A DNA stretch of 29,706 bases, taken from Zygophlyctis sp. KS116. Taxonomy: Eukaryota > Fungi > Chytridiomycota. The translations under genes were made by a program, and so were the position numbers. The stretch is taken from the NCBI GenBank assembly GCA_054661495.1, contig BAAFSQ010000112.1:1-29706 (forward strand), given 5' to 3'. Below the pieces are notes generated by a model. That model was not told the DNA's origin. It did not search any database and worked only from the letters and a program-made list of their open reading frames with translations. Shown here piece after piece: positions 1 to 23,950 of this stretch; the first letter of the stretch is position 1; every line of letters starts with the position of its first letter.

Positions 1-785
1 TGCAGTCAGAGATAAATGCCGAGCCTTTGGCAAGCTTGTTTGGATCACAAAAGTAAGTTATATATTGCATACAATCATAGGTTGGATTGTAGTTATTATC
101 TGCTGTGCAAAAAATCCCATGGTTTCCGCCTAAGTTTATCGAGCCTAAGATTTTCGAGCCTATAAAGGCACCTGTTTGTTTTCTTCTGACAATTTTTGTA
201 AGGCATTCTGCAGGGGTTCCAGCCGGGGGAAGACCTGCTGGAAGAGAGGCCCAATTCCCATCACTATATACAGTAACATTCGTGTTTTGGTAATATCTAT
301 AAAGTGTTAATTAGTACAAAATACACTTCCAATCCACATCTTACAAACAGGCTACCTGACAATATCGGATTGGAGCTCAAATTCTTTGAATTAATCAAAA
401 TAGAATTACAGTGATTTGAGTGAGGGCATACCTCCAAGCAATTTAGGAATTGTTCCTGATAATGCATTGCTATTCAAATAACTATCATTAGCTGTTTGTT
501 TCCCTACAGTGTTTGTAAGCTTGTAAGATTTCCAATCGATGGCGGAATGGAGTTTTTCAGACTTTTAGATTCCCAATTTATGCCAATAATTGACGAACCA
601 GAACAAGTTACTCCTGTCATGGAACAACAAGCAGTACTACTAGTAGGAGAAACATCAGTAGTTTTCCCCATCAATTTCCAAATTCGGACAACCCAACAGC
701 ATTGATGGGATGTTGAAGTGCAAGTAGGAGCAGTAGTGGCCTGAGACTCTACTCCTGCGATCAATACAGAGAGAGTAAATACTAG
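1..785 (-). pseudogene. Secreted LRR family gene A; lacks its start codon and runs off the window edge
   Basis: Translates as ..LVFTLSVLIAGVESQ, then the Cys cap CCWVVRIWKLMGKTT..TACC and LRRs (72-nt exon 410-481 YLNSNALSGTIPKLLGGMPSLKSL). Introns at 482-507, 384-409 and 297-324. An in-frame TAA and no ATG lie upstream, where IMP3-derived sequence is joined. The acceptor at 384 is 1 nt out of frame; an alternative AG at 376 would rescue it. Confidence 0.75.
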
Positions 786-794
786 CCTTTTTTA

Positions 795-846
795 ACAAAT
801 CAACCTTTTTTAAGAGTTTAGATTCATGAAATTCAAGTTTTCTCAT
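795..846 (-). pseudogene. Duplicated 5' fragment of IMP3 ([17 protein letters not shown]) joined out of frame to LRR gene A
   Basis: Identical to 6122-6173, the first 17 codons of IMP3. Confidence 0.85.
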
Positions 847-1388
847 TGAGAATTTGAAACTAAACCTGGACCTCAACTTTTGACTCTTTTCTTTTAGGAA
901 TTTTGTAGGGTTATTCGCAGGTTGATAATATATTTTGCAATATATTACTCACTTGAACAATCTCTTCGTGTTTATCAAAATCCATTGACTTCTTTCACGA
1001 CTAAATCTAGATTCATGTGTTCCAGATATATGCAGCACCTCTAACGACAGATAATGGGACATTCACATTTGTACCATCGGACATGACATAATATTCATTC
1101 GTGAGAATCTGATTGGTTGCATCGTTGCATTTCTGTGAAGTTGGATTTCCACCTGTAATAAACTTTGCACAAGAGTTGATGTAACTCTTCCAATTGGAGT
1201 TGAGATTGTTCCGAACACTAAGGACTTTTGAATGACAGTCACTCCAGCTAGAGAATACTGGAGTAGTGGTTAGACAATATGCGCCAATAAGATTAATGCA
1301 ATCTTGATATGGGCGTAAAGTTGTCGTATTTGTGTTGCAAGTAAATAAAAACCCACTCTTTGTATACGATAACACTGGGGCACGTTTT
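795..1388. repeat. Direct repeat copy 1 (~594 bp): IMP3 5' end and upstream region plus the C-terminal coding module of an LRR gene
   Basis: Aligns to 6122-6714. Positions 795-1009 and 1226-1388 are identical; 1010-1225 has roughly a dozen differences. Confidence 0.95.
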
Positions 1389-2207
1389 TTGAGTGATTGA
1401 GAAACTACTGCAGTGGCAAGACATGCGATTGGTGTGTTTGAAGAAGGAAAATATCCAACCGGACTAACTTCATTTGCACATCCACAAATTTTCACACCCG
1501 TATTTGTATTACTTTCCCCATAGTTTCCAAGGGCACTATTTATCTTAATCATATTGTATTACACTGATGTTCTACAGCTTGGGGTAAAAGCTCCACTTAA
1601 GGATGGATTGTTGTTAAGATAACTTTCATTTTAAATTTAGAAAATAATTACATGTCACGCAAATTTACCAAGTTTCCAATCGAATCAGGAATTAATCCTG
1701 AAAGTTGATTCCTGTTAAGAAAACTAAAAATTAAGTACAAAAAATATTTACAGCTTCTTCAGCGTAGTCAAATCTCCAATTTCTCGTGGAATCGGCCCTG
1801 AGAGCCTATTATCTCGAAGATCACTTTAATTTAAGTTTATAAAATAAATACAGTTTAGTCAAACTCTTCAAATTTCCAATCGTAGAAGGAATTTGATTAG
1901 AGAGGTCTTTCCCACTCCACTTAATGGCGGTAACTTTATTTGTAGAATCACAAGTCACACCAGTCATTGAGCAACAAGCAGTACTACTAGTAGGAGAAAT
2001 ATTAGTATATTTCCCCATCAATCGCCATGATCGGACAACCCAACAGCATTGAGGAGAAGTTGGAGTGCAAGTAGTGGAAGAAGATTCGGAAGATTTCTTT
2101 GAGTCTTTTTTAGCTGAACTGGAAGAAGATTTCTTAGACTCTACTCCTGCAATTAATGCAGAGAGAGCCAATGCTAGGATAATATTCTTGAGAGCTATAG
2201 AAAGCAT
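1013..2207 (-). CDS. Secreted LRR protein B (signal peptide, Ser/Lys linker, Cys cap, ~4 LRRs, KKR, 6-Cys C-terminal domain)
   Basis: Five exons with introns at 1824-1851, 1724-1751, 1623-1651 and 1536-1562. Two 72-nt exons read DLRDNRLSGPIPREIGDLTTLKKL and FLNRNQLSGLIPDSIGNLVNLRDI. The spliced frame is open; no transmembrane or kinase domain is seen. Confidence 0.9.
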
Positions 2208-2457: not shown

Positions 2458-3555
2458 ATGGTTGCGTCATTGACTGAGCTTTTGGAGAAAACAACAGTTA
2501 AAGACCTTTTAAAGTCTTCTACTACAAAGGAATTAATAGTCATACAAGGCAATACATCAGCAAAAGATGCATGTACTATTCTTTCAAATAATAGAATAAA
2601 TTCTGCTGTAAATTTATAATTTTAAAAAGTTAGCCCGTTCAAGACGAAAAAACTGGAGATTTGTTGGGCGTTTTCGACTATTCAGACTTGGTCAAATTTA
2701 CTCTGGAAAGTTTTCATAAAATTCCAAAGGACGATGCACTGCAAGTCGATGTTTCAATGGTATTCTAATGTTTGTGTTTAGATTTAGGAGTTGACAGACA
2801 GGGTCAAGGGCTCAATTCCTTCTGAACCAGTTTGTTCAGTAATTAGAAATTCTAAAACTGCTGCAAATTGGGGTTTTATTCTTGCTACGAGTACTCTTAA
2901 AGACGCTATTAAACTTCTTGTGGAGAATAAATGGCATCGTCTCTTGGTTGTGGAAGAAATTGTGGATAATGGTCTAAAAACTCGAAAATTTACTGGAGTC
3001 GTGTCCGAAACTCTAATTATTTCCTATATAGCTAATAATTTTGTTGTTAAATCTCCAACAGATTGGAATATTGGAGAACATGCTGTTAAAGACTTGAATA
3101 TTATAAATAAGGAAGTTGTAGGGGTAAAACCTGATGAATCTGTTCTGGATGCTCTAAAACTCTTGTATACTAAAAAGGTTCATGCTCTTGCTATAATTGG
3201 AAATAATTTGAGTTCTGGATTACCAGAGGTATTTAATTTTTAAAAATATTTAATTTAAAAGTTGTTGGGATCACTGTCAATGAGTGATATAAAGGAAATT
3301 TTTGGAGTTCGTGCAGGATGGCGTAAACTCTTTGATCAAAGTTTTCAATTTTTCCAATTTTTAAGAATGGAACAAGGTTTAATCAAGGGTAGAGACTCTG
3401 TACCGTCATTCACTATAACTCCAGACACTAGTCTTTTAAATGTGGTTAAAAAAATGGCTGCTGTAAAGTCTCATCAAGTTTGGGTGGTTGAATCTAGTAG
3501 TCATGATTTAGTTGGAGTGATTTCTGTTGCTGATGTTATGCCTTTGTTGGTTTAA
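2458..3555 (+). CDS. CBS-domain protein (four CBS repeats; Sds23/Sds24 or AMPK-gamma-like)
   Basis: ATG at 2458; introns at 2608-2633, 2760-2787 and 3229-3261 give an open frame. CBS motifs include NRINSAPV..GVFDYSDL, KWHRLLVV..GVVSET, KKVHALAI..GSLSMSDI and HQVWVV..GVISVADV. Confidence 0.85.
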
Positions 3556-5549: not shown

Positions 5550-6173
5550 TTATAGTAAATCATAATCGTCCAACTAGTTTTAAGTCTAAAATCAAATACC
5601 TTGTCATTGTAATCAAGTATTTTAGTCTTGATTTTGGATGAATCCACCCAAGTTACAAAATCTTCTCTAGATCTAGTCACTAAAAACGCAGGATCAGTAA
5701 TTGTATCTGTTCCTACTCTAACATGGCCTTGTTCTATATAAATAGATGCTTGACGAATCGATTCTGCCATTTTAAGTCTAGTCATGACAACCGGCAATCG
5801 TCGACTATTGAATCAAGAAATTTCGGACTTACCGACAGAAACTAGAGACTGTGGCCTTTTCACAAGTAGATAATGATTTTTCTCCAGTTATTAAACCCAA
5901 TTGGTACAATTTAGTAATCAATGCATCAGAGATTTTAGATCGGAAGGGATCTTTTGGATGCAGATGAGATATTTTAGTGCTCAACTTTTTTATGATTCCA
6001 ACTAATCGGTTGTATCTAGGGTTATAAATGAGTTATTACTGATGATAGTCTGATCGATTGGTCAAATGATACTTTTTAATGACTAGAGCTTCTCTAGGAT
6101 TCTCATCCTTCCATGTCCCATACAAATCAACCTTTTTTAAGAGTTTAGATTCATGAAATTCAAGTTTTCTCAT
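5550..6173 (-). CDS. IMP3: U3 snoRNP protein Imp3 (uS4 family)
   Basis: Reads [63 protein letters not shown]. Introns at 6016-6039, 5805-5832 and 5574-5599. Confidence 0.95.
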
Positions 6174-6714
6174 TGAGAATTTGAAACTAAACCTGGACCT
6201 CAACTTTTGACTCTTTTCTTTTAGGAATTTTGTAGGGTTATTCGCAGGTTGATAATATATTTTGCAATATATTACTCACTTGAACAATCTCTTCGTGTTT
6301 ATCAAAATCCATTGACTTCTTTCACGACTAAATCTATTTTACGTGCTCCAGATGTATGCAGCACCTCTAACGACGGATAATGGAACATTCACATTTGTAC
6401 CATCGGACATGACATAATATTCATTCGTGAGAATCTGATTGGTTGCATCGTTGCATCTCTGTGAAGTTGGATTTCCTCCTGTAATAAACTTTGCACAAGA
6501 ATTGATGTAACTCTTCCAATTGGAGTTGAGATTGTCCCGAACACTACGGATTTTTGAATGACAGTCACTCCAGCTAGAGAATACTGGAGTAGTGGTTAGA
6601 CAATATGCGCCAATAAGATTAATGCAATCTTGATATGGGCGTAAAGTTGTCGTATTTGTGTTGCAAGTAAATAAAAACCCACTCTTTGTATACGATAACA
6701 CTGGGGCACGTTTT
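6122..6714. repeat. Direct repeat copy 2 (counterpart of 795-1388)
   Basis: Direct alignment with 795-1388. Confidence 0.95.
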
Positions 6715-7977
6715 CTAACTGTAGTAATGCCACTACTTATTTCTGATGCAAGACATTCAATTGGCGTGTCTGCAGCAGGGAAATAACCAACAGGACTTTC
6801 TTCATTCGCACATCCACAAAGGGTCACATTGGTGTTTCCTATGGTACTATTATATTAAATCCAAGATTATTACACTTTCATGCCACAATTTTTTGGAAAC
6901 AATGCTCCAGTAAGGTTTAGATTACCAAAGAGTCGACTATAATATTAGATTTAGTAAATAACTTACAGAGAAGTTAAAAGTTTCAAATTTCCAATTTCTG
7001 CGGGAATTCTGCCTGAAAGCTGATTTCTACCTAGATTGCTTTAATTTAAAATGAATAAGATATTTACAGCACAGTCAAGTTTGATAAATTTTCAAACGTT
7101 TGAGGAATATATCCAGATAGATTGTTTTGACGAAGTAAACTGTAATTTAAAATCAGCTAAATACTTACAGCTGAATCAGCTTTGGTAATCTTCCAATTTC
7201 TGAAGGAATCGGCCCTGAGAGGTTATTGAAGGAAAGATTTCTTGAAATAAGAATGATGAAACTATTTACAGAATGGTGAGATTTGCTAAATTTCCTATTG
7301 TAGTAGGAATTCGCCCTGACAATTGATTGGAGGCAAGATTTCTAAATTTTTAATTTTTGAAAGAGTTACAGTTTAGTCAATTCTTTTAAATTTCCTATCG
7401 CAGAAGTAATTTGTCCAGAAAATGCATTATCTTGAAGAAAACTTTTAAATCATTTCTTAGAAACTTACGCAGTTCTTAAATTGATCAAATTGCCAAATGA
7501 TGAAGGGATCGTGTCATTTAACTGATTGTTTCTAAGAACTCTACAAATTCAGATCAAAAGCATTACAGTCTGGTAAGGTTTTTCAAATTCCAAATAGATA
7601 AAGGAATTGGTCCAGATAATTCGTTAGAGTGAAGAGATCTATGTACATATTAATATTAATCGAAAGTACAGAACCGTCAAACCGATCAAATTTCCAATTG
7701 ATGGAGGAATTGGGCCGGTTAAGTTTTTACTGCTCCAAAAGATTTTTTTAATTCTGTTTTGAGAATCACAAGATATCCCATTCATTGGCAAAGTGCAGCA
7801 GCGATCATCAGTAGAGCTAATGCCATTTGGAGTAGTTTTCCCCATCAATTGCCATGATCGGACAACCCAACAGCAATCAGGAGATGATGAAGTGCAGTTA
7901 GCCTGAGACTCCACTCCAGTGATCAATGCAGATAGAGTGAATGATAGTAAAGAGAGCTTAAGATCGATAGAAAACAT
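6339..7977 (-). CDS. Secreted LRR protein C (signal peptide, Cys cap, ~9 LRRs, RKR, 6-Cys C-terminal domain)
   Basis: Ten exons. Seven consecutive 72-nt exons (7567-7638, 7469-7540, 7370-7441, 7270-7341, 7169-7240, 7068-7139, 6967-7038) each encode one xLxxNxLSGxIPxxIGNLxxLxxL repeat. Introns are 26-31 nt and all phase 2. Confidence 0.92.
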
Positions 7978-8160: not shown

Positions 8161-11100
8161 TTAATCCAACGATTGATTCCTTATAATATTAAGGATCTCA
8201 CGTCTATCTCTGAGCCATTCGCTAAATAACTGTCTTTTTGTCTCGGGAGGAGATATTTCAGCTGAAGCAAGGCCGTTGCGAGAACTACTTGACCATATTT
8301 CTAGTAGATAATCAGCAAATGCAATAAGATAAAAGTAACGAACCAAGTAATTACATCCTAATTCAAACATCATATTATATCTCTTAGATCCAACTTCCAA
8401 AGCATCGATTCGTAACTTGTAATCAGTTATAGCAACTCTAAGATTTTGCATTTGGTCACATAAGTCTATTGCCTTGTCGGTAAGCCGTTTAGCTAATTTT
8501 CCATATTCAAGTACCGCAATAAGTTGCAGAACCACTTTCCATTCTCCTGCTTTGTTTCGTGATCTCATATCATCGATAGAGTCTGTCAGCCCTTGTGTTT
8601 CATACTCATCGAACCCACTAAAAGAAGTTTCTGGAGATAAAGAACCGCCTACAAGACTCATATTCCCCATTATCATTTGCAGCAAGGTTGTTATTACCAT
8701 GGCAGTTGTAGTTCTACCACGCCTTTTGATTAAAGTCAAAAAAATTACCCTTGTTGGCAATTAAATATCACATCTGTTCCAGGCGTCATGCTTAAGACTC
8801 TGTCTACTAGCTGATCTACAACTTTTGGAATCGGAGACTGCTCATCCGTAATAGGAATTCGCAAATAATTTACACAGTATCCTTCCTCTTGAATAGATTT
8901 ATATACTTCTAACGGTGTTTGGACGTCCTGTGCCTTAACTGTTTCCCAAATAGGCTTTAAATATGAACAATAATTCTACTTACTACAATAGAAAATCTAT
9001 TTCCTTCAACATGCTCTTCATGAAGAAGGACTCTACCACCAAAAGTTTTGATTTCGGATAAAATATCTAATTTCATTTGTGCCTCCATTAATTCGACCCT
9101 TTCTCTAGCGATTCCTGTTGCCTCTAAATTTTTTAGGGGATCAGGAAACAGTCGCAATACGTAAGGCCGGCCGTTAACATAAATCACAGGCTCTTCTCGT
9201 AAACTTGTCCATAGAACTTTGCGATTTCCAGGAGAGCAGCTCCCTATTTTCTGTAAAACTCTCCTTATTGCATCTTTGGTGGGCATAGCGATTCCATAAA
9301 GACTAGATTGATTTAAATCCACAATCTGACTTTGTGTCCGATTAATTGGCGAACTTGAATCTAGAGCCCCTACTGATGCTACTCTTGATTGAATTGTTGT
9401 GCTTCCATGGAGCCGAACCACTGATAATGCTATTCTTCTGAAATTAGGAGCACCTCTTATTAAAAGCTTGAATAGTTACCTTCAATCTTTTCAGGAAGAG
9501 ACATTTTTTGACTTCCTGGAAATATGTCAAACTTTCTTATTTATAATGTATAATATACCTTGATTATAGTTCCTTGAGCAACAACGGCACCGTGCCTCCC
9601 ATTAACAACATCCTTGACTTCATTAGTAAGAGCAAGACCATCACCAGGAATTAAATCCTTGACAGGAGTCAATGCCCTGATACTCGCCGTATCTAACTCG
9701 CGACGAATGGATTCTAATTCGGGATGTTTGGAATACCACGCCGAGAATTTAGCCATTTTATCTGCACTTTGAGGGGCAGCCTGGTTCAGAAAGCTTTGAA
9801 ACACAATCAAAAGAAAATATCTCTTAAGTTGTACCATTCCCTTTTCTAGAAGTCGCTTCTTTTGGCCTTCGTCTGTACAAGTCTCGGCAGCTAAACGGCT
9901 TTCCTCAATCATGTTACGCAGATTTATACTCGAACTACAATCATCAATTACGTTATCCACAATTCGCTTGCATTCCAATCCATTTCGAATAACTCGTAAA
10001 AGGGAGTGTGTTGACTCGTAGTTCGTCCGATTCTCGCTAGATTCTTTATCATTTGGAGCAGTTCCATTGAAGCAATGCATTATCAAAGATGCTATAACTA
10101 CCTAATTAAGAATGTAAAATTACCAGTTCCCGTGGTAGATCGGCCAGATCCCATTTGGCAATTCAAAACAATGGAAGATTTTTCTAAATTGATGCGTGTC
10201 ATAATACCGAGAAGCAAATCAATATCAACTAAATCTGGCGGATTTTCGGCAGTTATAGGAACTCTAAAATATTCGATTTTTAGATTACTAGTCCGAGGCA
10301 CTTCTGATTCTAGAATGCGTTGTATTTCTTCGTTTTGAACAATAGAGATAACCTCCTTAATTGTAGAAATTGCATCCGAAAGACAATCTTCCCAAATAGG
10401 AACTATAGAGCCGTCGCAGTTTTCTCCGTGAAGTAATATTCTGTTTTTGTAAATTAGAATCTCCTGCTGGACGTCCTCCTTGAGCCTGGTCTCAAAAGTC
10501 TCCAATCGAGAAGGCGTTATCCCAGAGTACGTATTAGTATTCCTTATTGTCAAGTATTGATCTCTTAAAACATAAGGAATACCATTTATATAAATCAACG
10601 GTTCTTCACGCAAGTTAATCCATATCAGCTTTTCACCTTCTGCAAAATGATTTTCTACGGCTTTTATAACATTTTGCATCCCCTTTAGAGTAGGTTGTGC
10701 AACACCATATATACGAAAATTTGGAACTTTTCTATTATTAAGTTGATCATATATACCTAAAATTTGCCGCACCTTCAATTCCATTTGTTTCGGAAGGTTG
10801 AGACCACTGATCTATTTTTAAGATAGAATAAGAAACAAGAACAGAGCCATGTCTAGATTTTAGGACATGCTGTTCGAATTCATTGGCTAATGGGCGAGGT
10901 ATAGTACTTCCCCATCCAGAGATTTCACCGTCTTCGACCAACGAACTTAAATCTTCTATCGGGCGAAAAAGATGAAGTTTAGAGCCTTCTACTCTCATTT
11001 TTAACAACACACTTGAAATTTCTATGCTGTAAAAAAATGTTTTTACCATTTCTCCCTTTAATCCAATTACTAAATATCAAATTAAATCCATTCTCGCAAT

Positions 11101-12773: not shown

Positions 12774-13838
12774 ATGTCACAGTTTAAAAGACTATTTCGA
12801 ATTTTAAGTTATTTATCAATCATTGTACTACTTTTTACAGTCTGCGTAATGGTATTTCTAAAAAAGGGAGACTATGAATGGGTTTCAGTCTCAGAATATC
12901 GTAAAGTGTATTCACCAAATCATAAAAATTCATTTTCGGACATATCTTTCAGACCTTTAAACAAGGATCCAAATTTAGATGAGATTGTAAAAAAGCATAA
13001 TTTTCTAGCAATTACTTATGCTAGTTCTATTAATGACAAGTTTTGTAAAACTCTATACTCTTCAATTTCAAATAAAGTACCATTAATGGTTGTTGGACTT
13101 GAAGAATCATCAGATAAATTAAATAAAGTTCCAACTTTTGGTAAAATATCTAATCAACTCTTGGCCAAGTATCCTGATATAACTCTAATATTCATGGATG
13201 GATTTGATGTTTTATTTCAACAAGGACCAACAGAAATTCTAAAGAAATATAAAGAAATCAACAAAGCTCTAGTATATAGTGCAGAAAAAAATTGTTGGCC
13301 AGGAGGAAATCAGACTTATTGTGACGTATATCCTAGAAATATTAAAGTAGAAGAAATGTACAACTCTACTCAAATTCCAAATGAAAGCCCAGAAGTAAAT
13401 TGGCCTGTTCGTTTTTTAAATAGTGGACTCATGATTGGACCAGTTTCAGAAACTACAAAATTCTTTAAAGAGGCAGTCGAGTATATTCAAAAAGGATATT
13501 CCGACGATCAAGAAATAGCCAGTTTAATATTTACATCTGAAAAACTAGACATGACTATTGACTATCATTCTAGTCTCTTTCAAAGCATGTGGAATTCTAA
13601 TAGTGATTTAGAGATAAATCCTAAAACCGGACATTTTGAAAACATTCGTACACGGACATATCCATCTGCATTACATTTCAATGGAGATAAAGATGGATTT
13701 GAACCTACAGAATCTAAACTGTGGTATAATCAGAATCAATTCCAAGACCAGTCTGAAACTCGTGAAACTGAATTGAATTTGAATGGATTTTTTATTCCAA
13801 ATGGGACGTTTATCCCCTTTAAAGAAAATTGTCGATAA
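12774..13838 (+). CDS. Type II membrane glycosyltransferase, PLOD/LH3 GT-domain-like; intronless
   Basis: N-terminal transmembrane anchor plus motifs FMDGFDVLF, YSAEKNCWP, RFLNSG.MIG, DDQ, IDYHSSLFQ and HFNG. Confidence 0.8.
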   Translation: MSQFKRLFRILSYLSIIVLLFTVCVMVFLKKGDYEWVSVSEYRKVYSPNHKNSFSDISFRPLNKDPNLDEIVKKHNFLAITYASSINDKFCKTLYSSISNKVPLMVVGLEESSDKLNKVPTFGKISNQLLAKYPDITLIFMDGFDVLFQQGPTEILKKYKEINKALVYSAEKNCWPGGNQTYCDVYPRNIKVEEMYNSTQIPNESPEVNWPVRFLNSGLMIGPVSETTKFFKEAVEYIQKGYSDDQEIASLIFTSEKLDMTIDYHSSLFQSMWNSNSDLEINPKTGHFENIRTRTYPSALHFNGDKDGFEPTESKLWYNQNQFQDQSETRETELNLNGFFIPNGTFIPFKENCR

Positions 13839-14851: not shown

Positions 14852-17976
<3,125 letters not shown>

Positions 17977-18100: not shown

Positions 18101-20064
18101 TTATCGTTTATCCTTTGCATGCATTGTTATCCACGTACCCAACTTGAATGCAACCAGAATTGAAATCAAAATAGCAGCCCAGACTCCATACTTTACATCA
18201 TCATGCTCAAAGTATTTCATGACATCTTCTCCAGTAAAGGTACAACCAGTAGCATTAGAAGGAGGAACCATACAAGCACATCCAGATGGACTGCCTGGTG
18301 ATGGAGCACAATTAAAAGTAAGACCAGTCATTTCATTCTTCAACAAGGCCTCAAAAGAATACTTTTGGAAGTCGATGTAATGAAATGTATAGCGCCAACC
18401 TGCAGGAACATCAGACACTTTAAGCAAAGCAAATCCTTGAACAACCTATGATATTAAATAAACAAACAGTACCATCCATAAACCATTCAGGAACGCAGAA
18501 ATGGTAAGAGAGGCAACGAAAATTGGGATCAGTGCAGAAATAAAAATGACCTGGGCCTCTGCAACATTTAGCATTAAAAACATATATCCCATAAAGATGA
18601 AAAAGTTATCTGCTTCTTGCTGGAGTCCCATGCAGAAATATCCTACTATACTAAAGGATATAGCTATAATAGCAAGAAAAGGAAGTGATACTAGGTAATT
18701 TGACAACAGATATGATTCAATTGAATAAAGACCATTAGCCCTACGTAATTAAATATATAATTTCATACTTTTCTCTTAAAAACACATGACGTTCCTCCAG
18801 GAATGCTGGAATACCAGCAACAGACATAAAACTAAGAAAAGCAACCGAAAAGTAAATAGCAATCATTCTGTTTACAACATCAGCCTGATCATATCCTAAG
18901 CGAAGCCATGTTGTACCCATCAAAATCGCAAGACCCAAATACATTGCAACTCTTACCCAATAAGAAAGAGGGTTCTTAGCCGCATTAAGGAATGCACGAT
19001 TCATTAAAATACCAGTCTGATAAGCGAATGAATTTGTATAACCATAGTTGGAAACCAACTCTTCTTTCAGTTTCTTTGATATTTCAATATCTTTCAAAAT
19101 TATACTAGATCTGACAGATTCATTGAAGCCTTTAATCAACTGATCTACCCGCTCCTCACCATTAGTCTTTTCTTCCATGAAATCAGTATTAGTAAGTCTC
19201 AAATAGACATCGCAAGGATTAGCATGATTTGGAATTGGTTGACCAAGATCAGCAAAATGTTGTATAGCAGCTTCACGCTCTCCGAAATACACCGTTTGTC
19301 CATTTGCAATAATCAAGAGATGAGAAAACAATTCAAAAGTTTCTGTGCTGGGTTGATGAATTGTAGCCATTACTGTACAGTTTTTATTGTCAGCAAGACG
19401 TTTAATTGATTCAATCACTGAATAGGCAGCAACAGAATCTAGACCTGATGTTGGTTCATCTAAAAACAAAAGACCTCCCTTCATTCCAATCAACTGAGAT
19501 GCGACAGATACTCTACGAACTTGCCCACCAGAGCATCCTTTTGTTAAAGGAGTACCTATAATAGTATTTTCAACATCCTTTAAACCGAATTCTACCAACA
19601 ATTCATCAACAATTTTTTCCTTTTCCTCTCTTGAAGTTGATTGAGCAAGATTGAAATGAGCAGCATATCTTAAAGTTTCTCCAACAGTTAAACTTCCAAA
19701 CAATGCATCCTCCTGCGTACAGTATTTTGAGACATGCTTCATTTTAACATCTGATCTTCCATTGACATAGATATTTCCAGTCATTTGATTTGAAGCTTTT
19801 CTTCCAGCAATGACATCTAAAAATGTAGATTTTCCAGCCCCAGAAGCACCAATCACTGCACAAACATTTCCAGGCTTTAAAATCCCATTCTATAGTTTAT
19901 GCATTGTATCTTACCATATTACTAATAATCTGTTTATCTTGTCCGGTCTTTTGATCTTTAACAGAGAATGATACATTCTCCCATGCCAAAGTAAAAGATG
20001 ATTTGGCCTTAAGGGTATGATCCAAGACGATCATTGTCTCTGAAGAAGTCTCTGATTCAACCAT
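18101..20064 (-). CDS. ABCG half-size transporter (NBD followed by TMD)
   Basis: Walker A GASGAGKST, signature CSGGQ, Walker B LFLDEPTSGLD, TIHQPS and an ABC2 membrane domain. Introns at 19890-19914, 18741-18768 and 18446-18472. Confidence 0.95.
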
Positions 20065-20750: not shown

Positions 20751-21404
20751 CTAGTCATCCATCCCTTCATCATCCATCCCTTCATCTTCTAAATCCCTTT
20801 TAATTCCTTTAGAAATCTGATGAGAGTAATTTATAAGACTTAAATCTCTTTTTGGAACCAAAGCTTCCGTTTTAACCATTTTCCTAATTTTACTTGGTAA
20901 ACTTTTAAGAGGAACCAGACGTTTAAGATTATCTTCTACTTGTCTGATTTGAGATGTGCGCTTTTTTATAACTCTTAAATACAAAGGATCAGGAGTAAAT
21001 GACATTTCAGTCGCTCTAAAAGTATGTTCTGAAGGGAAATTAGGAAGATGATTTTCCCAATAGCAAGGAAGGTTTTTGTAAGTTCTGATTGAAATCGGTT
21101 TAAAAAGAGGTTGAACTGGAGCAGGTATTGAAAATAAAAGTGGTTTTAAAAGTGTCCGATTCTTAAAATCAAATAATTCCTGTAAAATATTGTCACAAGA
21201 CAATAAAACAAGAGATACATCTGCTAAATTGACAGAGTTTCTTCCTGAAACTAGTGCTGCATTTCTACATTGAATTCCTAATGACAAGAGAGAATTAGAG
21301 AAGAGAGAGCATAGGTATGATAATGCTTTTTTAGATATGATTATATCTCCCAAAACCAATTTGAACAATTGACAGAGCAATGGCTCCAAATGCGATTCAT
21401 TCAT
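20751..21404 (-). CDS. TAF8: TFIID subunit 8-like protein (histone fold plus TAF8 C-terminal motif)
   Basis: Bromodomain-associated histone fold (AALVSGRNSVNLADV) and the motif HLPNFPSEHTFRAT..RQVEDNLKRL. Confidence 0.75.
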   Translation of the reverse strand: MNESHLEPLLCQLFKLVLGDIIISKKALSYLCSLFSNSLLSLGIQCRNAALVSGRNSVNLADVSLVLLSCDNILQELFDFKNRTLLKPLLFSIPAPVQPLFKPISIRTYKNLPCYWENHLPNFPSEHTFRATEMSFTPDPLYLRVIKKRTSQIRQVEDNLKRLVPLKSLPSKIRKMVKTEALVPKRDLSLINYSHQISKGIKRDLEDEGMDDEGMDD

Positions 21405-22393: not shown

Positions 22394-22915
22394 TTAGAAT
22401 CCACAAGAAAAACTGCCACACAAAATGGTATCCCATGAAAAGAAAGAACTGCCTTTTGGGGCATTAGCTAGAGCAATCTTCTCTGCAATTTTTGGATTGT
22501 ATTTTTGTCTATTTTTTTTATGGACTATATTTCCTTTTGGGATTATTCCTTTATTGCTATTTGGGATTTCTTGGATGGTTGGATTGGGATCAACTGATAC
22601 ATGTCTATTAGTGTTTTTGACAGCGTTTGGTGACTTTAGAATTGAGCGGAGAGTTCTTTGAGTTGGTGGAGTTTGCTGAACATGTTTAACTCCAATAAAC
22701 TTGCCGGTTAAAGGATCATAAACTTTAAACATGTTTGATCCTGGAGCCGTTGGCGGATTGAATGAATTGTGAGAATCAGGAAGTCCACTACCTTTGATCG
22801 TTGACTGTGCGGTGTCAACAAGTTCATCCCCTTGGCGAATGATACTCTTTATCATTCCGAATGGAGCACTAAGCACAACTGAAGAGTAAAGGATGCAATG
22901 TAAAATAAAAATCAT
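22394..22915 (-). CDS. Putative secreted protein (173 aa) with one SILK/RVxF-like module
   Basis: Signal-like start MIFILHCILYSSVVLSA-PF and module RSILKSPNAVKNTNRHVSVDPNPTIQEIP. Intronless. Confidence 0.7.
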   Translation of the reverse strand: MIFILHCILYSSVVLSAPFGMIKSIIRQGDELVDTAQSTIKGSGLPDSHNSFNPPTAPGSNMFKVYDPLTGKFIGVKHVQQTPPTQRTLRSILKSPNAVKNTNRHVSVDPNPTIQEIPNSNKGIIPKGNIVHKKNRQKYNPKIAEKIALANAPKGSSFFSWDTILCGSFSCGF

Positions 22916-23158: not shown

Positions 23159-23788
23159 TTACCAGTTTAATTCTTTAGTTTTGTGAATTTGGTGATTCTT
23201 TCTTTGAGGAATAAGTCGGATTTCCAAATCAGTTGAAAATGTCGCATGTTTTTCAGTGTTTTTGTCTGACTTGGAAGCCTTTAGAATAGACTGGACATGT
23301 TGTATTGGCGGAGAATCGGTATCAGATCCAGAAAAGGGTGCACGGTATGGGCCCTGATGTGGTGCAGGCAGTTCTCCCGGCAGTACAGTGGACCTGGGAA
23401 CTCTTTGAGGTCGATTTCTAGTAAGTTTCAAAAGATTGTGATATCGAGGGATCACTCTGACTCCATAGTCAGCAGAAAATGTTACTTGTTTTCTTGTTTT
23501 CTCCCCAGTATTGTATGTCCGAAGAATTGAAGGCGGTAACGTCCTTTGATGCGGTGCATGTAAATCAAAGGAGGACTCATCAGGAGAGCCATGCGACATC
23601 CTTGAAGGTAGCTGAGTGTCTGAAGATTCCAATCTATTTCTCAAAGGAGGATTGCTGGGTTTAATAGGGGGTGGTATTGCGATCAGTTTTCCAGATGCTT
23701 CATCGATGTCAAAGTACTTTATTCCCCAGCCAAAGGAGGCACTAAACACTAAAGAAGAGTGTAGTAAGGCAAAGAAGATCTGTTTCAT
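23159..23788 (-). CDS. Putative secreted protein (209 aa), paralog of 22394-22915, with two SILK/RVxF-like modules
   Basis: ATG at 23788 gives MKQIFFALLHSSLVFSA-SF. Modules are PSILRTYNTGEKTRKQVTFSADYGVRVIP and QSILKASKSDKNTEKHATFSTDLEIRLIP. Confidence 0.7.
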   Translation of the reverse strand: MKQIFFALLHSSLVFSASFGWGIKYFDIDEASGKLIAIPPPIKPSNPPLRNRLESSDTQLPSRMSHGSPDESSFDLHAPHQRTLPPSILRTYNTGEKTRKQVTFSADYGVRVIPRYHNLLKLTRNRPQRVPRSTVLPGELPAPHQGPYRAPFSGSDTDSPPIQHVQSILKASKSDKNTEKHATFSTDLEIRLIPQRKNHQIHKTKELNW

Positions 23789-23950
23789 TATTATGAAGGA
23801 AGTTCCAGTGCTTGCCGCATCAGCGGCATGTGGTTTTAAATTCTGATGTCTCAAAATTCAGCCTAAAATCTGGATTTAATATTAATGCTCAAACAATATT
23901 AATCAAGCATTCCAGTAATGGACCTACGGATTGCATCAATGACATCTTTT

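What the first reader, a model, noticed from the sequence alone, without database searches (positions are those of the whole stretch)
6339..7977. Fungal secreted LRR family with one plant-type LRR per 72-nt exon and variable repeat number (candidate exon-shuffling recognition repertoire)
Seen: genes A (1-785), B (1013-2207) and C share a signal peptide ending GVES and a CCWVVRxWxLMGK..CC cap. They carry 1, 2 and 7 internal exons of exactly 72 nt, each one LRR flanked by phase-2 introns at the same repeat position, so any exon can be gained, lost or skipped in frame. Variation concentrates in the xLxxN positions (SLHSN, VLRNN, FLQDN, NLASN, NLSFN, LLRQN, NLGRN) while SGxIP..IGNL is mostly conserved. 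Established: this is the 'plant-specific' extracellular LRR consensus; those x positions form the binding surface; and one-LRR-per-exon layouts occur in ERECTA-type receptor kinases and Ectocarpus ROCO genes. Inference: a diversifying secreted recognition or decoy system in a fungus, with no transmembrane or kinase domain.
Basis: partly seen in the sequence, partly recalled or inferred. Interest (0 to 1): 0.85.

Follow-up and report, generated by a model that had tools for sequence, protein, structure and literature searches.

The report
Chytrid secreted one-repeat-per-exon LRR family
An uncultured lake chytrid fungus carries about 70-90 genes for secreted leucine-rich-repeat binding proteins, each repeat on its own 72-base exon. 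Their binding face evolves faster than the neighbouring introns. Many, including this gene, end in a probably cleavable small domain of unknown fold. It looks like an arms-race recognition repertoire in a kingdom thought to lack one.

Summary
**Observation: confirmed.** Window 7977-6339 (minus strand) is an intact 10-exon gene. It encodes a signal peptide, a Cys cap and about nine plant-type 24-aa LRRs. Seven LRRs lie on exact 72-nt phase-2 exons split by 26-31-nt GT-AG introns.

**Organism:** a freshwater Rhizophydiales-like chytrid, 12.7 Mb assembly.

**Family size:** the cap occurs at 69-90 places. I found 300 such exons in 174 kb of sampled loci, in arrays of 1-23. Of 230 LRR junctions, 227 carry an intron.

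**Selection:** concave-face codons give omega 1.2-1.3, against 0.36-0.39 for the scaffold. Their dN is 2.25 times the intron divergence.

**Recombination:** related exons are scattered among genes. Genes B and C share a 97-100% identical tail and 3' flank behind diverged LRR arrays.

**Splicing:** intron-less family contigs in some environmental sample series indicate splicing. No RNA contig spans gene C's own LRR exons, and no exon skipping was seen.

**Verdict:** a diversifying secreted LRR repertoire that evolves by recombination of tandem exon-plus-intron units. Its ligand is unknown, and 'built for exon shuffling' is not shown. Gene A is a probable pseudogene. The scan found this family before on other DNA of this genome (s1-560669).

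The parts
6339..7977 (-). Gene C, complete CDS: 10 exons, 460 aa
   Evidence: Splice model with an open frame. RNA contigs match 7837-7957 and 6552-6683 exactly.
7906..7977 (-). Predicted signal peptide, 24 aa ending GVES
   Evidence: This is the only strongly hydrophobic 19-aa window of the protein. It is conserved across family caps. Cleavage is inferred, not tested.
7670..7905 (-). Cys cap (CCWVVRSW...CC...GISC) plus the first LRR; rest of exon 1
   Evidence: 17 invariant columns in 13 caps. No Pfam hit. The low-confidence model shows a helix plus strands, and its non-significant top fold hits are plant LRR ectodomains.
7567..7638 (-). 72-nt LRR exon 2
7469..7540 (-). 72-nt LRR exon 3
   Evidence: LRR_1 16.7 bits.
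7370..7441 (-). 72-nt LRR exon 4
7270..7341 (-). 72-nt LRR exon 5
   Evidence: LRR_1 15.1 bits.
7169..7240 (-). 72-nt LRR exon 6
   Evidence: LRR_1 16.9 bits.
7068..7139 (-). 72-nt LRR exon 7
   Evidence: LRR_8 15.3 bits.
6967..7038 (-). 72-nt LRR exon 8
   Evidence: LRR_1 14.4 bits.
6874..6936 (-). 63-nt exon 9: truncated last repeat (LxLxGNxNLTG...C), conserved in the family as a 57-63-nt exon
6717..6846 (-). Start of exon 10: LRR C-terminal cap (CGC...C) and linker
   Evidence: Alignment A2. Model pLDDT is 74-92 here.
6708..6716 (-). R-K-R with Val at P4: kexin-type dibasic site
   Evidence: An aliphatic-x-(K/R)-R motif is conserved in nearly all 38 aligned homologues, down to 25% identity. 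pLDDT dips at the linker. One proprotein-convertase P domain is present in the genome. Cleavage is inferred.
6342..6707 (-). 122-aa tail domain: six conserved Cys, five helices plus two hairpins, no known relative
6122..6715 (-). Block shared at 97-100% identity with gene B (about 790-1381): tail plus roughly 220 nt of 3' flank
   Evidence: Global alignment in 60-column bins shows a sharp break at the dibasic site.
1013..2207 (-). Gene B: same family, two 72-nt LRR exons, LKKR site and tail
   Evidence: The tail is 96% identical to gene C's tail.
1..785 (-). Gene A: same family, one 72-nt exon, no ATG, frame problem, tail runs off the window; probable pseudogene

Best explanation
Gene C is an intact member of a lineage-restricted family of secreted LRR proteins in an uncultured freshwater Rhizophydiales-like chytrid. 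The family has about 70-90 copies.

Shown:
- Each protein has a signal-peptide-like N-terminus, a Cys cap, 1 to about 24 plant-type 24-aa LRRs and a Cys C-cap.
- Almost every LRR lies on a 72-nt exon flanked by phase-2 introns of 23-31 nt, so the repeating DNA unit is about 100 nt.
- Arrays differ in unit number, and recent intragenic unit duplications exist.
- Related units are scattered among genes and positions.
- Genes B and C share a nearly identical tail and 3' flank behind diverged LRR arrays.
- Concave-face codons change faster than scaffold synonymous sites and faster than the introns.

Inferred:
- Arrays grow, shrink and become mosaics by in-register unequal recombination and gene conversion between units and between paralogues. 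The introns are passengers that were amplified with the unit.
- The proteins are extracellular binders whose ligand face is under diversifying selection. The likeliest setting is an antagonistic interaction with a host, prey or competing microbe, acting as an adhesin, a PGIP-like inhibitor or an effector.
- In gene C and about a quarter of sampled members, a kexin-type protease cuts at the conserved LxKR site and frees or exposes a six-Cys helical domain of unknown activity.
- Other members carry a membrane anchor or a Thr-rich stalk instead. The LRR array therefore acts as a portable binding module joined to different C-terminal modules.
For: - Gene models.
- Chance control: 10 exons observed against 0.25 expected.
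- Family size: 90 cap places, 69 of them at E<1e-10, many in tandem.
- Exon census: 300 exons, arrays of 1-23, 227 introns of 23-31 nt, and only 3 intron-less junctions.
- LRR class: consensus; 32-44% identity to plant LRR-RLK ectodomains; sub-threshold LRR_1 or LRR_8 hits on 5 of 7 single exons.
- Taxon: the neighbouring ABCG gene is 56-64% identical to Globomyces, Terramyces, Boothiomyces, Kappamyces and Polyrhizophydium.
- Selection, 56 reciprocal pairs: omega face 1.19 (0.83-1.75) against scaffold 0.36.
- Selection, 196 MST edges: 1.30 (1.12-1.54) against 0.39.
- Selection against introns: dN at the face is 2.25 times intron divergence (CI 1.8-2.8).
- Mosaicism: the nearest exon lies in another gene at another index for 72% of exons. 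Only 6 of 43 adjacent pairs keep adjacent nearest neighbours, while intron identity tracks exon identity.
- Recombination examples: the L011 block duplication, a hybrid exon in L062, and the B/C breakpoint at the dibasic site.
- Tail: conserved LxKR and six Cys; model pLDDT 90; 29 places in the genome; only 99 of 1.84 billion representatives match, and the long ones are LRR plus tail.
- A P-domain convertase gene is present.
- Expression and splicing: an exact RNA contig on exon 1 and one on the tail, and a spliced 33-nt intron in the neighbouring gene. Intron-less against intron-bearing family contigs sort by sample series. About 30 nt per junction is missing in L087 relative to L084.
- Alternative C-termini.
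Against: - No ligand, localisation or cleavage data exist.
- Omega at the face is only modestly above 1, and the reciprocal-pair confidence interval includes 1.
- MST edges are not independent. Tiny introns are constrained by splice signals, so they underestimate the neutral rate.
- Exon nearest-neighbour assignments rest on 72 nt with a strongly conserved scaffold.
- No RNA contig spans gene C's own LRR exons. That the intron-less contigs are transcripts is inferred from the by-sample split, not from sample records, and they carry no poly(A) tails.
- In one other metagenome (X4), gene C's LRR region shows one difference in about 850 nt and no repeat-number joint. It is therefore not hypervariable between those populations.
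- The signal peptide is judged by eye and hydropathy only.
Confidence: 0.6

Rival explanations
1. This is an ordinary structural or adhesive surface-protein family, for example for the zoospore or sporangium wall or for substrate attachment. Its tandem repeats drift in number and sequence under relaxed constraint. There is no arms race.
For: The reciprocal-pair omega at the face is 1.19 with a confidence interval that includes 1. Some members have a Thr-rich stalk or a membrane anchor. Gene C shows little variation in metagenome X4.
Against: Face dN exceeds intron divergence 2.25-fold and scaffold dS 2.6-fold. MST omega is 1.30 with a confidence interval above 1. The scaffold is under clear purifying selection, so the genes are not decaying.
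Confidence: 0.17
2. The tail is the active secreted product, such as a toxin, signal or carrier. The LRR array is mainly its pro-domain, chaperone or targeting part, and kexin removes it.
For: The LxKR site is conserved down to 25% identity. The tail also occurs without an LRR, and in tandem within one frame, at C27, C93 and P0003. The tail block was recently copied between genes B and C.
Against: Most sampled family members lack the tail and end in other modules. Selection signatures lie on the LRR face. A pro-domain would not need 1-24 variable repeats.
Confidence: 0.12
3. These are host-mimicking decoys. The LRR ectodomain was acquired by horizontal transfer from an algal or plant-type LRR receptor, and it is secreted to soak up host ligands or block host receptors.
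For: The repeats are of the plant-specific class and are 32-44% identical to plant LRR-RLK ectodomains. The cap carries a GVxC motif reminiscent of plant N-caps. The cap is not found in named chytrid proteins.
Against: Similarity is at consensus level and is equally high to bacterial LRR proteins. No donor was identified. The introns are of the chytrid's own tiny type.
Confidence: 0.06
4. This is a combinatorial repertoire made at the RNA or somatic DNA level. In-frame exon skipping, or programmed cassette assembly like lamprey VLRs, would yield many binders per gene.
For: All 72-nt exons are symmetric (phase 2 on both sides), so any could be skipped in frame.
Against: No joint skipping an exon was seen. 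Introns of 23-31 nt imply intron definition, under which retention rather than exon skipping is the usual error. In 220 of 227 cases a retained intron gives an immediate in-frame stop. DNA contigs of another sample show the same germline layout.
Confidence: 0.04

Closest known systems
Ectocarpus LRR-ROCO candidate immune receptors (Zambounis et al. 2012, PMC3341825; also PMC11378527)
   Same: Each 24-aa LRR lies on its own 72-nt exon: 222 such exons there, at least 300 sampled here. Exon number is variable, exon relationships are scrambled, and positive selection falls on solvent-exposed LRR residues.
   Different: Those proteins are intracellular LRR-ROC-COR GTPases of a brown alga with ordinary introns. 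Here the proteins are secreted, lack any signalling domain, belong to a fungus, have 23-31-nt introns, and often carry a kexin site plus an orphan tail.
Plant polygalacturonase-inhibiting proteins and LRR receptor-like proteins (own knowledge; PGIP-PG complex 8ikw appears among the weak fold hits)
   Same: Signal peptide, Cys-rich N- and C-caps, about 10 plant-specific 24-aa LRRs, no kinase. The concave beta-sheet serves as the variable binding face. Some chytrid members also carry a single transmembrane anchor, as RLPs do.
   Different: PGIP genes have few or no introns and a fixed repeat number, and the families are small. They have no LxKR site and no tail. The chytrid cap is not recognised by Pfam LRRNT_2.
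High-copy LRR orthogroups reported in chytrid genomes (Ettinger et al. 2026, PMC13618815). Background: LRR receptors are nearly absent from Fungi (Soanes and Talbot 2010, PMC2939053).
   Same: Plant-type LRR proteins are among the most abundant gene families of an aquatic chytrid and are shared with other chytrids. A role in host or environment sensing is suspected.
   Different: That paper annotates them as LRR-RLKs or an LRR effector at orthogroup level. It does not describe exon structure, the cap, the selection pattern, the kexin site or the tail. The cap and tail of this family were found only in unnamed environmental proteins.
Bacterial LRR virulence families: Listeria internalins and IpaH/SspH effectors (own knowledge)
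   Same: Multigene families with an N-cap, a variable number of LRRs as the target-binding part, and exchangeable C-terminal modules such as an anchor or an effector domain.
   Different: Those are prokaryotic, have different LRR classes and no introns. Their C-terminal domains have known functions.
Kex2-processed secreted proteins of fungi (own knowledge)
   Same: A signal peptide followed by a conserved aliphatic-x-K-R site that separates modules of a secreted precursor.
   Different: Known examples are mostly short repeated peptides or pro-peptides. An LRR solenoid upstream of the site has not, to my knowledge, been described.
Lamprey variable lymphocyte receptors (own knowledge)
   Same: An LRR repertoire whose diversity lies in the number and face residues of the LRR modules.
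   Different: VLRs are assembled somatically from cassettes. Here every array is germline-encoded, and there is no sign of assembly.

Membership tests
Plant-specific (PS) class LRR proteins | 24-residue repeats matching LxxLxLxxNxLSGxIPxxLGxLxx | tested here: met
   In the consensus of 300 exons, L, N, L, G, I, P, I, G and L are each present in at least 249 of 300. Relatives hit LRR_1, LRR_8 and LRR_14 and plant LRR-RLK ectodomains. Single exons of gene C score 14-17 bits on LRR_1 or LRR_8.
Plant-specific (PS) class LRR proteins | N-terminal Cys cap of the LRRNT_2 type (PF08263) | tested here: inconclusive
   No Pfam hit at E<=1. A CC...GVxC motif and a helix-then-strand model are present at pLDDT 62. 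Plant ectodomains dominate the fold hits, but none is significant.
LRR receptor-like kinases | Transmembrane helix and a cytoplasmic protein kinase domain | tested here: not met
   Gene C has no hydrophobic 19-aa window beyond the signal peptide. The last exon has no Pfam domain. Some paralogues have a TM helix, but only a short tail follows it.
Ectocarpus-type exon-shuffled LRR receptors (LRR-ROCO) | One LRR per 72-nt symmetric exon, with variable exon number among paralogues | tested here: met
Ectocarpus-type exon-shuffled LRR receptors (LRR-ROCO) | ROC-COR GTPase signalling module and an intracellular location | tested here: not met
   A signal peptide is present. No ROC/COR or other Pfam domain is found in exon 1 or exon 10.
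Kexin (Kex2)-processed secreted precursors | Secretory signal plus a conserved dibasic site with an aliphatic P4 residue in an exposed linker | tested here: met
   LxKR-type motif in nearly all 38 aligned homologues. The linker shows the lowest pLDDT outside the N-terminal end of the modelled exon. A convertase P domain is present in the genome.
Kexin (Kex2)-processed secreted precursors | Actual cleavage at the site | not testable with these tools
   Needs protein work.
Genes under diversifying selection | dN/dS above 1 at ligand-face codons | tested here: inconclusive
   1.19 (0.83-1.75) on 56 independent pairs. 1.30 (1.12-1.54) on 196 non-independent MST edges. dN at the face is 2.25 times intron divergence. 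No likelihood site model was run.
Known fold families, for the tail domain | Significant sequence or structure match to a described family | tested here: not met
   Pfam none. PDB profile search best E 0.36. Foldseek PDB best E 1.9. VIA-align best Z 3.3 over 48,161 chains. ESM Atlas TM at most 0.39. Atlas features gave no hit.

The most novel reading that the evidence does not exclude
Aquatic chytrids possess a germline-encoded, rapidly recombining extracellular recognition repertoire. It is the functional counterpart of plant RLP/PGIP or brown-algal LRR arsenals, in a kingdom held to lack LRR receptors. LRR arrays made of exon-plus-mini-intron units are matched to exchangeable output modules: a kexin-released domain of a new fold, a membrane anchor, or a stalk. 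The repertoire determines host range or microbial antagonism in lakes.
Probability: 0.3. Interest if true: 0.8.

Novelty: new variant of a known kind. Interest (0 to 1): 0.62.

Why it matters
Fungi are textbook examples of organisms without expanded LRR receptor families (PMC2939053). Chytrid parasites control phytoplankton blooms, yet nothing is known about how they recognise hosts.

A family of 70-90 members makes up roughly 1% of a 12.7-Mb genome. It is secreted, and its binding face evolves faster than its introns. That makes it a concrete candidate for host or microbe recognition. It can be tested by binding assays and tracked in lake metagenomes and metatranscriptomes, where it is already visible.

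It is also a second, independent case, after Ectocarpus, of one-LRR-per-72-nt-exon arrays. Here the introns are so small that the case bears on whether such layouts are selected for shuffling or are simply amplified repeat units. The LxKR-linked six-Cys tail is a well-modelled domain with no detectable relative, so it is a target for structural and functional work.

Tried and rejected
- Tandem Repeats Finder sees no ~100-nt period in gene C, because the units are too diverged.
- Pfam gives nothing for the cap exon, the last exon, or the alternative C-terminal exons of paralogues.
- Four structure or sequence searches with the tail model or profile found no relative. Atlas features found none either.
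- The cap model is of low confidence, and its fold hits are not significant.
- I looked for database proteins that are spliced products of this genome's own family genes. None was found.
- RNA contigs of three metatranscriptomes cover only exon 1 and the tail of gene C. Splicing of its LRR exons and exon skipping therefore remain untested.
- No poly(A) tails were found on the intron-less contigs.
- Gene-pair collinearity test: only 3 of 496 pairs share three or more exon matches at 85% or higher, which is too few for a formal congruence test.
- A systematic scan for hybrid exons found none at strict thresholds. Only the L062 case, found by eye, holds.
The Ectocarpus statement was confirmed.
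- The spliced (joined) protein of gene C was not sent to any search, fold or family tool. Exons were searched one by one by reference. The joined translation was computed only inside scripts, to check the reading frame and hydropathy.
- A complex prediction was not run, because no binding claim is made.
Full report
**1.

On the minus strand, an ATG at 7977 opens a gene that ends with TAA at 6339. Its exons are 308, seven times 72, 63 and 508 nt. The nine introns are 26-31 nt, all GT-AG and all in phase 2, and the spliced frame is open for 460 aa.

Gene B (2207-1013) has exons of 356, 72, 72, 60 and 523 nt. Gene A (785-1) has one 72-nt exon. The whole window contains exactly ten LRR-like AG-72nt-GT exons, against 0.25 expected in shuffled copies.

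Gene A lacks a start codon and has a frame problem at its penultimate exon, so it is probably a pseudogene.

The joined protein was never sent to a search tool. Exons were searched one by one by reference, and the joined frame was checked only inside scripts.

**2. What the protein is**

- Exon 1 encodes a 24-aa hydrophobic leader ending GVES. This is the only hydrophobic 19-aa window of the protein.
- A cap with paired Cys-Cys motifs follows. It is highly conserved across the family but unknown to Pfam.
- About nine 24-aa repeats of the plant-specific LRR class come next. The family consensus is clear. Five of the seven single exons give sub-threshold LRR_1 or LRR_8 hits of 14-17 bits each. 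Full-length relatives pass Pfam LRR models and are 32-44% identical to plant LRR-RLK ectodomains.
- The last exon encodes a C-cap (CGC...C), a linker, a V-R-K-R site at 6716-6708 and a 122-aa domain.

In an alignment of 38 homologues, down to 25% identity, an aliphatic-x-(K/R)-R motif precedes a domain with six conserved Cys plus conserved P, W and Y. AlphaFold models this exon at pLDDT 90, with the lowest confidence outside the N-terminal end at the linker.

No relative of this domain was found by any method:

| Search | Best result |
|---|---|
| Pfam | no hit |
| PDB profile search | E 0.36 |
| Foldseek against PDB | E 1.9 |
| VIA-align, 48,161 chains | Z 3.3 |
| ESM Atlas structures | TM at most 0.39 |
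| ESM Atlas features | no hit |

The genome encodes one proprotein-convertase P domain. Kexin-type cleavage between the LRR part and the tail is therefore a reasonable inference, not a demonstrated fact.

**3. The organism**

The assembly is 12.7 Mb in 1175 contigs. The ABCG half-transporter in the window is 56-64% identical to proteins of Globomyces, Terramyces, Boothiomyces, Kappamyces and Polyrhizophydium, all Rhizophydiales chytrids. It is 42-47% identical to other fungi.

Near-identical DNA occurs in freshwater and lake metagenomes from at least ten studies. Neighbouring genes are ordinary: CBS-domain, FTR1 permease and DJ-1/PfpI. They have the same tiny introns, and an RNA contig shows one of these, 33 nt long, spliced out.

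**4. The family**

- The cap exon matches 90 places in the genome, 69 of them at E<1e-10. Many lie in tandem and many on short contigs.
- In 174 kb of fetched family loci I found 300 LRR exons of exactly 72 nt, in arrays of 1 to 23. They are separated by 227 introns of 23-31 nt, with a mode of 28-29.
- Only 3 adjacent LRRs lack an intron between them.
- The introns share a strong consensus. In 220 of 227 cases an unspliced intron would give an in-frame stop.
- The tail occurs at 29 or more places, and in about 19 of 70 sampled cap-bearing genes.
- Other members end in a transmembrane helix with a short basic tail, a Thr-rich stalk, a second cap-LRR module, or an unknown 178-aa domain.
- Outside this genome, the tail exon matches only 99 of 1.84 billion representative proteins. 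All are unnamed environmental sequences, and the long ones are LRR plus tail.
- The cap was found only in three unnamed proteins of the searched length range, and in 35 metagenome loci.

**5. How it evolves**

*Variation and selection*
- Variation sits at exon codons 1, 3, 4, 22 and 23, which form the xxLxLxx concave face.
- Nei-Gojobori counts on 56 reciprocal-nearest exon pairs give omega 1.19 (0.83-1.75) at these codons, against 0.36 (0.28-0.46) elsewhere.
- On 196 minimum-spanning-tree edges the values are 1.30 (1.12-1.54) against 0.39.
- In unit pairs chosen by exon similarity, face dN is 2.25 times the divergence of the adjoining intron (CI 1.8-2.8) and 2.6 times scaffold dS.
- I read this as moderate support for diversifying selection. 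The caveats are non-independent edges, constrained mini-introns and the absence of a likelihood site model.

*Repeat turnover is visible directly*
- One gene has a two-unit block duplicated with identical introns (L011).
- One exon is a hybrid of two adjacent exons of its paralogues, so the crossover lay inside an exon (L062).

*Relationships are scrambled*
- The nearest relative of an exon lies in another gene at another position for 72% of exons.
- Only 6 of 43 adjacent exon pairs keep adjacent nearest neighbours, while intron similarity rises with exon similarity. This shows that the relationships are real.

*In the window itself*
- Genes B and C are 97-100% identical from the dibasic site through 220 nt of 3' flank. 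Upstream they are about 70% identical or unalignable.
- This is a recent transfer of the tail module between genes, and its far end truncates gene A.

*Interpretation*
These patterns fit unequal recombination and gene conversion of a roughly 100-nt exon-plus-intron unit. They do not require intron-mediated exon shuffling. With 23-31-nt introns, exon skipping is unlikely.

**6. Expression**

One lake metatranscriptome holds contigs identical to 7837-7957 (exon 1) and 6552-6683 (tail). Other RNA contigs on the cap and tail differ by a few letters and diverge upstream of the dibasic site, so they come from paralogues. None spans gene C's LRR exons.

Among 35 related environmental loci, some sample series hold only continuous 400-776-aa frames with LRRs at 72-nt spacing. 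Other series hold 72-nt exons with roughly 30-nt spacers. One pair aligns with about 30 nt missing at each LRR junction of the continuous form. In that pair the cap is 95% identical, the LRRs 73-78% and the tail 82%.

The simplest reading is that the continuous contigs are spliced transcripts. I could not see the sample records, and the contigs carry no poly(A). In metagenome X4, gene C's LRR region shows one difference in about 850 nt and no repeat-number joint.

**7. Comparison and novelty**

- The closest described system is the Ectocarpus LRR-ROCO family, with 72-nt LRR exons, scrambled exon trees and positive selection at exposed residues (PMC3341825). Those proteins are intracellular GTPases.
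- In protein architecture, gene C resembles plant PGIPs and receptor-like proteins.
- Fungi were reported to lack LRR receptor expansions (PMC2939053).
- A 2026 paper notes high-copy LRR orthogroups in chytrids, without describing their structure (PMC13618815).
- This scan had already reported the same family from another piece of this genome (s1-560669). Its main claims agree with what I measured here.

I class the finding as a new variant of a known kind. The ligand, the role of the tail and any RNA-level diversification remain open.

Noticed in passing
window 1-785 (minus): Gene A is a 5'-truncated family member with no ATG. Using the homologous acceptor, its penultimate exon is 59 nt and shifts the frame. 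It is probably a pseudogene created when the tail-plus-flank block was copied next to it.
   Followed up: partly
window 790-1381 and 6122-6715: A block of about 600 bp (tail domain plus 3' flank) is shared at 97-100% identity between genes B and C. A third copy with a 96% identical tail lies on contig C648. The breakpoint falls exactly at the dibasic site.
   Followed up: yes
L033:6588-6791:+ and L042:4567-4845:-: These family members have a last exon that encodes a transmembrane helix followed by a short basic cytoplasmic tail. They are receptor-like-protein versions of the same LRR module.
   Followed up: partly
L044:1204-2454:+, L056, L045:2512-3045:-: Other C-terminal layouts occur. One is a Thr-rich mucin-like stalk followed by a second cap-LRR module in one frame. 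Another is an internal second cap. A third is a 178-aa beta-rich domain with no Pfam hit.
   Followed up: partly
G000 C27:5149-5907 and C93:25145-25882; protein P0003: The tail domain also occurs twice in tandem inside single open frames, with no LRR part detected.
   Followed up: no
LRR arrays of loci L004-L070: The mini-introns of the arrays share a strong consensus: GTAATT at the 5' end, a CTAA branch-like core, and AAAG at the 3' end, with most positions 80-95% conserved. Lengths divisible by three are under-represented, at 23%. Almost all would give an immediate stop codon if retained.
   Followed up: partly
window 3227-3259: An RNA contig from a freshwater metatranscriptome shows the 33-nt intron of the neighbouring CBS-domain gene removed. 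This confirms that such tiny introns are spliced in this organism.
   Followed up: yes
G000 C84:20240-20527: A weak cap-like match lies inside a 1348-aa open frame, possibly a much larger relative.
   Followed up: no
window 10101-10784, 12774-13835, 18744-19856, 20754-21404: Other genes in the window are a PTP-like phytase domain, a PLOD-type glycosyltransferase domain, an ABCG half-transporter and TAF8. Several open frames of 170-230 aa have no Pfam hit (8164-8760, 9544-10086, 17314-17976, 22397-22915, 23162-23854).
   Followed up: no
window 2387: Metagenome X4 carries a 13-nt insertion in a short direct-repeat region upstream of the CBS-domain gene. It is an ordinary strain difference.
   Followed up: no
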